The notes under the pieces are model-generated. The model saw only the letters and a list, made by a program, of their open reading frames with translations, was not told the DNA's origin and made no database searches. Shown here piece after piece: positions 25,787 to 26,291 of a stretch of DNA of 64,000 nt. The stretch's first letter is position 1. The number at the start of each line of letters is the position of its first letter. Where the stretch lies: positions 55,490,001-55,554,000 of the forward strand of contig OZ365110.1 of NCBI GenBank assembly GCA_977030845.1, in the 5' to 3' direction. The translations under genes were made by a program, and so were the position numbers. The DNA is from Fimbriosthenelais zetlandica. Lineage: Eukaryota.

Positions 25787-25905
25787 CTTCCACCAAAGCA
25801 GTTAACAGTGTGCAGGTCACTGCTTTGCGCCGTCCGGCCGGTAAATTTAGACCTATTTTGTCTAATCTTTCTCTCAGTACACGGCCGCCATTTTTGGATT
25901 TAGCT
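25787..25905 (-). CDS. TFAP2: AP-2 exon 5b (downstream copy of duplicated basic-region exon)
   Basis: (R)[39 protein letters not shown](G). Acceptor ctgcttttgtataattccag|A, donor GAAG|gtgagt. Length 119 nt with the same phases as 5a. Confidence 0.93.
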
Positions 25906-26172
25906 CTGGAATTATACAAAAGCAGGGAGAGGAGGATGTATTCTGTATCAATACAATAAGATTGGTCCTGTGTTGTTGCTCTTTTGGTCACTTTTCGAGT
26001 TTGTTGGGGGATGGGGAAGCATGTGCAGGACAGGAGAGTCCATCCTTCCAGTTGCGTCATGCAGGTCGGGACCTGTGGGATAGGAGGAGGGATACCACCG
26101 TGCAGCGAGGGGGGAAAAAGGAAATAAAAAAATAGTTCCGGTGACAGTTTTTCAGATCACTCCGCCACTCAC

Positions 26173-26291
26173 CTTCCACCAGCGATGTTAAGAGCGTCAC
26201 TGTTGCTGCCTTACGTCGACCTGCCGGTAAACTTAAACCGATTTTGTCTAATTTATCTCTCAAAGATCTGCCTCCATTTTTGGATTTTGCT
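26173..26291 (-). CDS. TFAP2: AP-2 exon 5a (upstream copy of duplicated basic-region exon)
   Basis: (R)[39 protein letters not shown](G). Acceptor ttattgcctttcag|A, donor GAAG|gtgagt. Length 119 nt, phase 2 in and phase 1 out. Confidence 0.95.

What the first reader, a model, noticed from the sequence alone, without database searches (positions are those of the whole stretch)
25787..26291. Tandemly duplicated, apparently mutually exclusive exon in the AP-2 DNA-binding domain
SEEN: two 119-nt exons (26173-26291 and 25787-25905), 267 nt apart. Both have AG acceptors, GAAG|gtgagt donors and identical phases (2 in, 1 out), and both encode the segment matching vertebrate TFAP2A exon 5. By my codon-by-codon count they differ at 30/119 nt, with 16 synonymous codon changes and only 7 amino-acid changes (S/V, D/E, K/R, S/N, A/V, V/C, S/A). 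AKSKNGGR and LPAGRRKA are untouched. Joining both gives [13 protein letters not shown], and skipping both gives AG|G-TGA, an immediate stop, so only one copy at a time preserves the frame. ESTABLISHED: this segment belongs to the basic DNA-binding and nuclear-localisation region of AP-2; vertebrates diversified AP-2 by gene duplication (alpha to epsilon); frame-breaking duplicate exons are a standard signature of mutually exclusive splicing. INFERENCE: the excess of synonymous change implies an old duplication with both copies under purifying selection. One gene could then make two DNA-binding variants and mixed dimers. 5a (RSLRDKLDK) resembles the alpha/gamma type and 5b (RVLRERLDK) the beta/delta type as I recall them. 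5b also adds a Cys beside the RRK motif, a possible redox handle. I am not aware of this arrangement being described for AP-2, but I could not search the literature.
Basis: partly seen in the sequence, partly recalled or inferred. Interest (0 to 1): 0.92.

Follow-up and report, generated by a model that had tools for sequence, protein, structure and literature searches.

The report
Alternative exon pair in AP-2 gene
A probably annelid AP-2 transcription-factor gene carries two tandem, selectively maintained copies of the exon encoding its DNA-reading loop, and RNA from a related species uses one copy or the other, so one gene makes two slightly different DNA-binding domains.

Summary
Two 119-nt minus-strand exons (26291-26173 and 25905-25787) lie 267 nt apart. 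Both have AG acceptors and GAAG|GTGAGT donors. They differ at 30 of 119 nt: 16 synonymous codons and 7 replacements (dN 0.135, dS 1.36). Including both, or neither, breaks the reading frame.

The mutually exclusive reading is well supported.
- The flanking introns no longer align, so only the exons were conserved.
- The same tandem pair, with intact splice sites, occurs in two other assemblies (61-nt and 73-nt spacers), in DNA contigs of a close relative, and in Lingula anatina.
- NCBI already lists two 481-aa Lingula isoforms that differ only in this exon.
- In a relative's run, two 172-nt contigs join the exon 4 end to 5a or to 5b and then to the exon 6 start. Their flanks are identical and their depths similar.
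- No served RNA run covers the window's own species.

Pecten, Owenia and Watersipora have a single copy.

All published DNA-contacting residues of TFAP2A are identical in both copies. The 7 variable residues lie in helix alpha3, Loop3 and the DBD-HSH linker, so the difference is probably modulatory.

I file it as a new member of a known kind, with FoxP as the closest analogue. I found no paper describing it. Interest is moderate.

The parts
26173..26291 (-). Exon 5a. This is the canonical copy, encoding [14 protein letters not shown]...TSLVE: Loop2 with the base-reading Lys, helix alpha3, Loop3 and the DBD-HSH linker.
   Evidence: It is 38/39 identical to the Pecten exon 5. Organism A has a contig joining exon 4 end, 5a and exon 6 start.
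25906..26172 (-). Intron between the two copies (267 nt, GT...AG).
   Evidence: It cannot be aligned with the other flanking introns or with relatives.
25787..25905 (-). Exon 5b. This is the divergent copy, with 7 replacements including V9, N20 and C31.
   Evidence: Its orthologue in L001 shares V9/E12/N20. Organism A has a contig joining exon 4 end, 5b and exon 6 start.
36936..37134 (-). Exon 4, the start of the TF_AP-2 domain (...[30 protein letters not shown]). It ends in phase 2.
17881..18022 (-). Exon 6 ([18 protein letters not shown]...).
13165..13447 (-). Last coding exon (helix-span-helix dimerisation part), including the stop codon.
49989..50042 (-). Tentative exon 3 (...YITGEHNSVIKR).
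   Evidence: Weak tblastn match to P0204 residues 180-197, E 0.023. More 5' exons were not found in the window.
25560..25782 (-). Long hairpin (68-nt arms, 88% complementary) that begins about 10 nt after the 5b donor. It belongs to a repeat family, so it is probably a MITE-like insertion. Any effect on 5b splicing is unknown.
   Evidence: dG -136 kcal/mol, z -13.3; related copies at 34055-34116 and 42999-43084. It is absent at this spot in organism B (loose ends).

Best explanation
The window holds the 3' two-thirds of a single AP-2 (TFAP2) gene on the minus strand, probably from an annelid. Exon 5 encodes TFAP2A residues 256-294: Loop2 with the base-reading Lys257, helix alpha3, Loop3 and the linker to the dimerisation domain. 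This exon was tandemly duplicated long ago, and both copies are maintained as mutually exclusive alternatives.

Each mRNA takes 5a or 5b. Taking both or neither shifts the frame into an early stop, so such products are non-productive and, by inference, removed by NMD. The result is two AP-2 isoforms with identical N-terminal activation and C-terminal dimerisation parts and identical DNA-contacting residues. They differ at 7 positions on alpha3, Loop3 and the DBD-HSH linker.

Inferred: these changes tune affinity, half-site spacing tolerance, stability or regulation (for example through Cys31) rather than the GCC core specificity. Where both isoforms are co-expressed, a/a, a/b and b/b dimers can form.

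Shown: the anatomy, selection on both copies, conservation of the pair, and single-copy inclusion of each exon in a relative's RNA. Inferred: use of both copies in this species, NMD of aberrant forms, and any biochemical difference.
For: Anatomy and frames. Both copies hit Pfam TF_AP-2.

Selection:
- dN/dS is about 0.1 with dS saturated, while the flanking introns are unalignable.
- Against organisms A and B, 20 of the 22 listed substitutions in 5a and 5b are synonymous. Organism B's flanking and inter-copy introns do not align at 80%.

Conservation of the pair:
- L001 has a 61-nt spacer and L002 a 73-nt spacer. All four exons are 119 nt with AG/GT sites.
- Lingula L003 has two copies about 690 nt apart.
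- Organism B genomic contigs from 3 runs carry both copies.
- a/b orthology between the window and L001: 5a matches 5a at 82% versus 76% to 5b, and 5b matches 5b at 77% versus 73% to 5a. The diagnostic residues S9/V9, D12/E12 and S20/N20 are shared.

Transcripts:
- Run X1 has two 172-nt contigs with identical flanks that translate to SLLGGVLRR and GEAVRLAR. One carries the 5a orthologue (depth 7.1) and the other the 5b orthologue (depth 5.6).
- Lingula isoforms X1 and X2 are both 481 aa and differ only at residues 296-331.
- P0204, a full-length metatranscriptome AP-2, carries a divergent b-like exon.

Structure mapping: PMC10450164, with the numbering anchored by the PDB alignment.
Against: No served RNA run holds this species' own transcript, so use of 5b in this organism is inferred from relatives. 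Contigs show presence, not absence, so a low level of 5a+5b or skipped transcripts cannot be excluded. No cis mechanism for exclusivity was found in the window: the intron is 267 nt, too long for steric blocking, and there is no significant docking/selector pairing. All known DNA-contact residues are the same in both copies, and most variable positions also vary between species. The functional difference may therefore be small.
Confidence: 0.85

Rival explanations
1. The exon pair is mutually exclusive, but the two proteins are biochemically equivalent. The duplication would then persist through subfunctionalised splicing or expression control (or drift) rather than through different DNA-binding properties.
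For: All published base and backbone contacts (A256, K257, S258, K259, N260, R263, R266, K282) and the disease-sensitive residues are identical in 5a and 5b. Positions 9, 12, 13 and 20 vary freely among species. In L001 the b copy differs from the a copy at only 4 residues.
Against: The a/b-specific residues S9/V9, D12/E12 and S20/N20 are shared between the window and L001 despite saturated synonymous divergence. Cys31 is kept in two relatives. The divergent copies in Lingula, P0204 and the window all carry a Cys at positions 29-38.
Confidence: 0.3
2. In this species 5b is an unused, slowly decaying relic (pseudo-exon), and only 5a is spliced.
For: 5a is the canonical sequence (38/39 identical to Pecten). 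No RNA of this species could be examined. A large repeat-derived hairpin sits 10 nt after the 5b donor.
Against: 5b has an open frame, consensus AG and GTGAGT sites and exact length. dN/dS against 5a is about 0.1. 15 of 17 listed substitutions in 5b against organisms A and B are synonymous, while the adjacent intron is unalignable. The orthologous 5b is spliced between exons 4 and 6 in organism A.
Confidence: 0.05
3. The pair is an assembly artefact, such as a collapsed haplotype, a misjoined paralogue or an in-silico duplication.
For: None beyond the general possibility. The window does contain two N gaps, but they lie elsewhere (32916-33070 and 40585-40832).
Against: The copies are only 75% identical and their flanks are unrelated. 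The same arrangement is seen in independent assemblies and in contigs of three separate runs of a relative.
Confidence: 0.01
4. The two spliced contigs in run X1 come from two paralogous genes, or two organisms, each with a single exon 5. They would then not be alternative splicing of one gene.
For: X1 is known only as contigs. Its library type is guessed, and organism A's genome was not examined.
Against: The 28-nt exon 4 and 25-nt exon 6 flanks are identical in both contigs, including at synonymous sites. The contigs form a k=31 bubble. The contigs are orthologous to the window's tandem 5a and 5b at 87% and 86% identity, and related genomes carry the two exons 61-296 nt apart in one gene.
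Confidence: 0.04

Closest known systems
FoxP / FoxP1 alternative forkhead-domain exons (Santos et al. 2011, PMC3002244)
   Same: A single invertebrate transcription-factor gene carries tandemly duplicated exons inside its DNA-binding domain and splices them alternatively, giving two DBD variants. Vertebrates expanded the same family by gene duplication.
   Different: In FoxP the alternative exon changes residues that hydrogen-bond to bases, and the pattern is reported as ancestral to Bilateria. In the AP-2 gene all known DNA contacts are retained. In my sample the pair was found only in a probably annelid clade and in Lingula. It was absent from the Pecten, Owenia and Watersipora loci and from annotated arthropod and mollusc isoforms.
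Lingula anatina AP-2 isoforms X1 and X2 (XP_013408010.1 and XP_013408011.1, NCBI automatic annotation)
   Same: The same gene family, the same exon (119 nt, same phases), two tandem copies, and two 481-aa products that differ only in that exon.
   Different: Spacing is about 690 nt versus 267 nt, with 14 versus 7 residue differences. The exon tree cannot show common origin with the window's pair. These are annotation entries only, and I found no description in a paper.
Vertebrate TFAP2A-E paralogues
   Same: Diversification of the same DNA-binding/dimerising factor, with the possibility of mixed dimers.
   Different: Vertebrate paralogues are separate genes that differ over their whole length. 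Human alpha and beta differ at only 2 of the 39 exon-5 positions, fewer than 5a versus 5b. There is no orthology between 5a/5b and particular paralogues.
Classical mutually exclusive exon clusters with a defined cis mechanism (steric hindrance from a too-short intron; docking/selector RNA pairing as in Dscam1 or 14-3-3zeta). These examples are from my own knowledge, not from a paper read here.
   Same: Tandem homologous exons of equal length and phase, with the frame broken by double inclusion or skipping.
   Different: In the window the intron is 267 nt and no significant competing RNA pairing was found. Only L001 (61 nt) and L002 (73 nt) have spacers short enough for a steric mechanism.

Membership tests
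AP-2 (TFAP2) transcription factor gene, Pfam PF03299 | The TF_AP-2 domain is encoded across consecutive exons. | tested here: met
   Exons 4, 5a, 5b, 6 and 7 hit PF03299 at profile positions 1-44, 46-84, 46-84, 86-131 and 135-197. The spliced product is 77-84% identical to lophotrochozoan AP-2 proteins.
AP-2 (TFAP2) transcription factor gene, Pfam PF03299 | The DNA-contacting residues of the solved TFAP2A-DNA complex are conserved. | tested here: met
   The equivalents of R254, R255, A256, K257, S258, K259, N260, R263, R266 and K282 are present with either exon 5 copy.
Mutually exclusive exons from tandem exon duplication | The exons are adjacent, homologous, and equal in length and phase. | tested here: met
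   Both are 119 nt, with 75% nt and 82% aa identity and the same phases.
Mutually exclusive exons from tandem exon duplication | Both copies have usable splice sites and are under purifying selection. | tested here: met
   AG/GT sites are present in all copies of the four loci with a pair (window, L001, L002 and Lingula L003). dN/dS is about 0.1. Substitutions between species are nearly all synonymous.
Mutually exclusive exons from tandem exon duplication | Mature mRNAs contain exactly one copy, and each copy is used. | tested here: inconclusive
   This is met in a relative: organism A has an exon4-5a-exon6 contig and an exon4-5b-exon6 contig. It is also met in the Lingula annotation. It could not be tested in the window's own species because no RNA run is served.
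Mutually exclusive exons from tandem exon duplication | Double inclusion or double skipping is non-productive. | tested here: met
   119 is not a multiple of 3. Including both gives a stop after 10 codons, and skipping both gives an immediate stop. Removal by NMD is inferred.
Mutually exclusive exons from tandem exon duplication | Transcripts with both copies included are absent. | tested here: inconclusive
   No 5a-5b joint was seen, but contigs drop rare variants.
Steric-hindrance type of mutually exclusive splicing | The intron between the copies is too short to be spliced (roughly under 60 nt between the donor and the branch point). | tested here: not met
   The window's intron is 267 nt. 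In L001 (61 nt) and L002 (73 nt) the mechanism is possible.
Docking-site/selector RNA-pairing type of mutually exclusive splicing | Conserved intronic complementary elements compete for pairing. | tested here: not met
   There is one 13-nt perfect match between the 5a acceptor and intron 5 (I8). However, duplex energies are not better than shuffles (z between -1.9 and +0.9). No intronic blocks are conserved with L001, L002 or L003.

The most novel reading that the evidence does not exclude
The same AP-2 exon, the one carrying the base-reading loop and the DBD-HSH linker, was duplicated independently in an annelid lineage and in brachiopods, and each time became a mutually exclusive pair. This would be convergent evolution of a splice-switchable AP-2 DNA-binding domain. 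In most lineages sampled the divergent copy acquires a Cys in the linker (window C31, P0204 C33, Lingula C29 and C38), which would give a redox- or spacing-tuned isoform. This would be the invertebrate counterpart of vertebrate TFAP2 paralogue diversification.
Probability: 0.3. Interest if true: 0.65.

Novelty: new member of a known kind. Interest (0 to 1): 0.5.

Why it matters
AP-2 factors are central regulators of ectoderm and neural-crest-type programmes. Their diversification has been discussed in terms of vertebrate gene duplication. This locus shows that some spiralians instead diversify the DNA-binding domain of their single AP-2 gene by a conserved splice switch, as FoxP does. That gives a clean natural experiment on which non-contact residues of the AP-2 DBD and linker matter. 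It also bears on gene models, in-situ probes and knock-outs in annelids and brachiopods: annotations that pick one copy miss an isoform. It is one more case for the interchangeability of alternative splicing and gene duplication. It does not reveal a new mechanism.

Tried and rejected
1. RNA of the window's own species. Both run searches returned only a relative's RNA (X1) and relatives' DNA contigs (X2-X5), so junction counts in this species were impossible.

2. A protein search ranked on P0204's b-like exon returned only fish AP-2 gamma/epsilon that share LTALVE.

3. P0222 versus P0629 differ by one residue (K/R) at exon-5 position 13 and looked like a second isoform pair. The CDS comparison shows only 4 scattered nucleotide differences, so they are alleles, not alternative exons.

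4. L009, the closest relative by exon 7, reaches exon 6 but not exon 5 within the 10-kb flank. The Lineus gene is too long to fetch.

5. Docking/selector pairing. Inverted-repeat and duplex scans were no better than shuffles, and no conserved intronic blocks were found.

6. A third, decayed exon copy. None was found in the window, L001, L002 or L003.

7. The exon-level tree (117 nt) is too short to decide between one origin and several.

8. Six literature searches found no paper on alternative exon 5 in AP-2.

9. The alpha/gamma versus beta/delta correspondence is rejected.

Full report
OBSERVATION. The finding is on the minus strand. Exon 5a is 26291-26173 and exon 5b is 25905-25787. Each is 119 nt, and a 267-nt GT...AG intron separates them. 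Both have a pyrimidine-rich tract ending in CAG and a GAAG|GTGAGT donor. They differ at 30 of 119 nt. In frame, that is 16 synonymous codon changes and 7 replacements (S9V, D12E, K13R, S20N, A29V, V31C, S36A), with 18 of the 30 differences at third codon positions. Nei-Gojobori gives dN 0.135 and dS 1.36. Each copy alone hits Pfam TF_AP-2 at the same profile positions, 46-84.

GENE CONTEXT. The exons belong to one AP-2 gene:
- exon 4: 37134-36936
- exon 5a and exon 5b, as above
- exon 6: 18022-17881
- last coding exon: 13447-13165
- a tentative exon 3 at 50042-49989

Splicing 4-5a-6-7 or 4-5b-6-7 gives an open frame to the stop. Including both copies gives ...[13 protein letters not shown] followed by a stop. 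Skipping both gives a stop right after ...LRR. Only single inclusion is productive.

SELECTION. The 150 nt on either side of the two exons do not align at all, and synonymous sites between the copies are saturated. The duplication is therefore old, and only the coding 119 nt have been held. Contigs of two related organisms were laid on the region. Of the 22 listed substitutions in 5a and 5b, 20 are synonymous, and the other two are E12D and V9A. Organism B's flanking and inter-copy introns do not reach 80% likeness. The Cys codon of 5b is kept as TGT in both relatives.

THE PAIR IN OTHER GENOMES. A search ranked on the 5b peptide returned two prokaryote-style ORF calls from ENA assemblies that read straight through two tandem exon-5 copies.
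- The loci L001 and L002 show the copies 61 nt and 73 nt apart. All four exons are 119 nt with AG/GT sites, and exons 4, 6 and 7 lie nearby.
- L001's first copy has S9/D12/S20 and its second copy has V9/E12/N20, like the window.
- At nucleotide level, window 5a matches L001 5a better than L001 5b (82% versus 76%), and window 5b matches L001 5b better than L001 5a (77% versus 73%). The a/b split therefore predates the divergence of these two species.
- Genomic contigs from three runs of organism B carry both copies about 296 nt apart.
- In Lingula anatina the two copies lie about 690 nt apart (L003).
- The Pecten maximus, Owenia fusiformis and Watersipora subatra loci have a single copy.
- Annotated isoforms of ten further arthropod and mollusc groups show only one exon-5 type per gene, as do those of Lineus, Haliotis, Gigantopelta, pectinids, Glandiceps and sea stars.

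TRANSCRIPTS. No served RNA run holds this species' transcript. Run X1 is from a relative whose exons are 86-87% identical to the window's. It contains two 172-nt contigs. One is the 5a orthologue and the other is the 5b orthologue. Both carry the same 28 nt upstream and the same 25 nt downstream. These flanks translate to SLLGGVLRR, the exon 4 end, and GEAVRLAR, the exon 6 start. This is the bubble expected from two isoforms in a k=31 assembly graph, with depths of 7.1 and 5.6. No 5a-5b joint was seen, though contigs cannot prove absence.

Two further transcript observations agree.
- NCBI's Lingula isoforms X1 and X2 are both 481 aa and differ only at residues 296-331, each using one genomic copy.
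- A full-length metatranscriptome AP-2 (P0204) carries a divergent, Cys-containing exon 5.

TAXON. In a tree of the C-terminal 250 residues, the window groups with L001 and L002 (support 95/83). This group is sister to two marine metatranscriptome sequences, and Owenia is the next branch out (support 85/78). The organism is therefore probably an annelid. This is an inference from a short alignment. It agrees with unverified scan notes about annelid-type cuticle collagen elsewhere in this genome.

WHAT THE EXON ENCODES. The 39 residues align one-to-one with TFAP2A 256-294 in PDB 8J0K. In that structure (PMC10450164):
- K257 in Loop2 reads the GCC bases.
- A256, S258 and N260 hydrogen-bond to the DNA backbone.
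- K259, R263, R266 and K282 form the basic surface.
- Disease mutations at the equivalents of A256, K257, L265, R266 and R281 reduce or abolish binding.

All of these residues are identical in 5a and 5b. The seven variable positions correspond to S264, E267 and K268 (helix alpha3, interleaved with R263 and R266), N275 (Loop3), and A284, V286 and S291 (the linker to the helix-span-helix domain).

The most likely consequence is modulation of affinity, half-site geometry, stability or regulation, not a new core motif. The dimerisation domain is shared, so mixed dimers are possible. This paragraph's functional part is inference.

HOW EXCLUSIVITY IS ENFORCED. The frame rule is shown by the sequence. 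NMD of aberrant forms is inferred from general knowledge. Spacers of 61 nt and 73 nt in L001 and L002 could block 5a-to-5b splicing sterically, but 267 nt in the window cannot. I looked for competing RNA pairings.
- A 13-nt perfect complement exists between the 5a acceptor and a site 423 nt downstream of 5b. However, duplex energies are no better than shuffles in any of four species.
- No intronic block is conserved.
- A 68-bp-stem hairpin starts 10 nt after the 5b donor (dG -136 kcal/mol, z -13.3). It is a member of a repeat family present elsewhere in the window, and it is not at this position in organism B. It is probably a MITE-like insertion of unknown effect.

COMPARISON AND NOVELTY. The closest described analogue is FoxP, where tandem exons inside the forkhead domain are alternatively spliced in invertebrates and in vertebrate FoxP1 (PMC3002244). 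Six literature searches found nothing on alternative exon 5 in AP-2, but the Lingula isoforms are already in public annotation. Other first-stage notes report some 50 candidate mutually exclusive exon pairs in this same genome, including in Vsx, Pax2/5/8 and ARNT (unverified). If those notes hold, this is one instance of a common habit of this genome. I file it as a new member of a known kind. It is real, well supported and of moderate interest.

Noticed in passing
window 25560-25782: A 223-nt element with 68-nt inverted arms folds into a very stable hairpin (dG -136 kcal/mol, z -13.3). It starts about 10 nt downstream of the 5b donor. Related copies lie at 34055-34116 and 42999-43084, so it is probably a MITE-like repeat. 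It could influence 5b donor use.
   Followed up: partly
window 26285-26297 and 25351-25363: A 13-nt perfect complementarity links the exon 5a acceptor (UUUCAG|AGCAAAA) to a site 423 nt downstream of 5b. About 0.05 such matches are expected by chance in this 2.5-kb stretch. It is not supported by duplex-energy controls or by conservation.
   Followed up: yes
L002 and L009 (same ENA assembly, ERZ26222911): The assembly holds two different AP-2 loci on contigs labelled 4x and 35x. L009's exon 7 is 80-87% identical to the window's, depending on the aligner. L002 carries the 73-nt-spaced exon pair in which the divergent copy comes first. The sample may contain two organisms, or the lineage may have two AP-2 genes.
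   Followed up: partly
exon 5 positions 29-38 in window 5b, P0204 and Lingula copy 2 (L003 39419-39535): The divergent copy carries a Cys in the DBD-HSH linker in three lineages (C31; C33; C29 and C38). The canonical copies and all single-copy species sampled have none there. L001 and L002 have no Cys in either copy.
   Followed up: partly
L007 versus L008 (P0222 / P0629): Two marine metatranscriptome AP-2 contigs from different projects differ at 4 of about 1270 aligned coding nucleotides. One of these is a K/R change at exon-5 position 13. This looks like allelic variation in one planktonic species.
   Followed up: yes
window 32916-33070 and 40585-40832: There are two runs of N in the introns or upstream part of the AP-2 gene.
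   Followed up: no
window 35618-35679 and 19176-19385: Purine-rich low-complexity repeats (translating as ERE/GRE runs) match a similar simple repeat in the Lingula locus (L003 8078-8142). This is most likely compositional, not homology.
   Followed up: no
same genome, other windows (scan notes): 52 first-stage notes describe candidate tandem mutually exclusive exon pairs in this genome, several of them in DNA-binding domains (Vsx, Pax2/5/8, ARNT). This suggests a genome-wide tendency worth a systematic survey.
   Followed up: no
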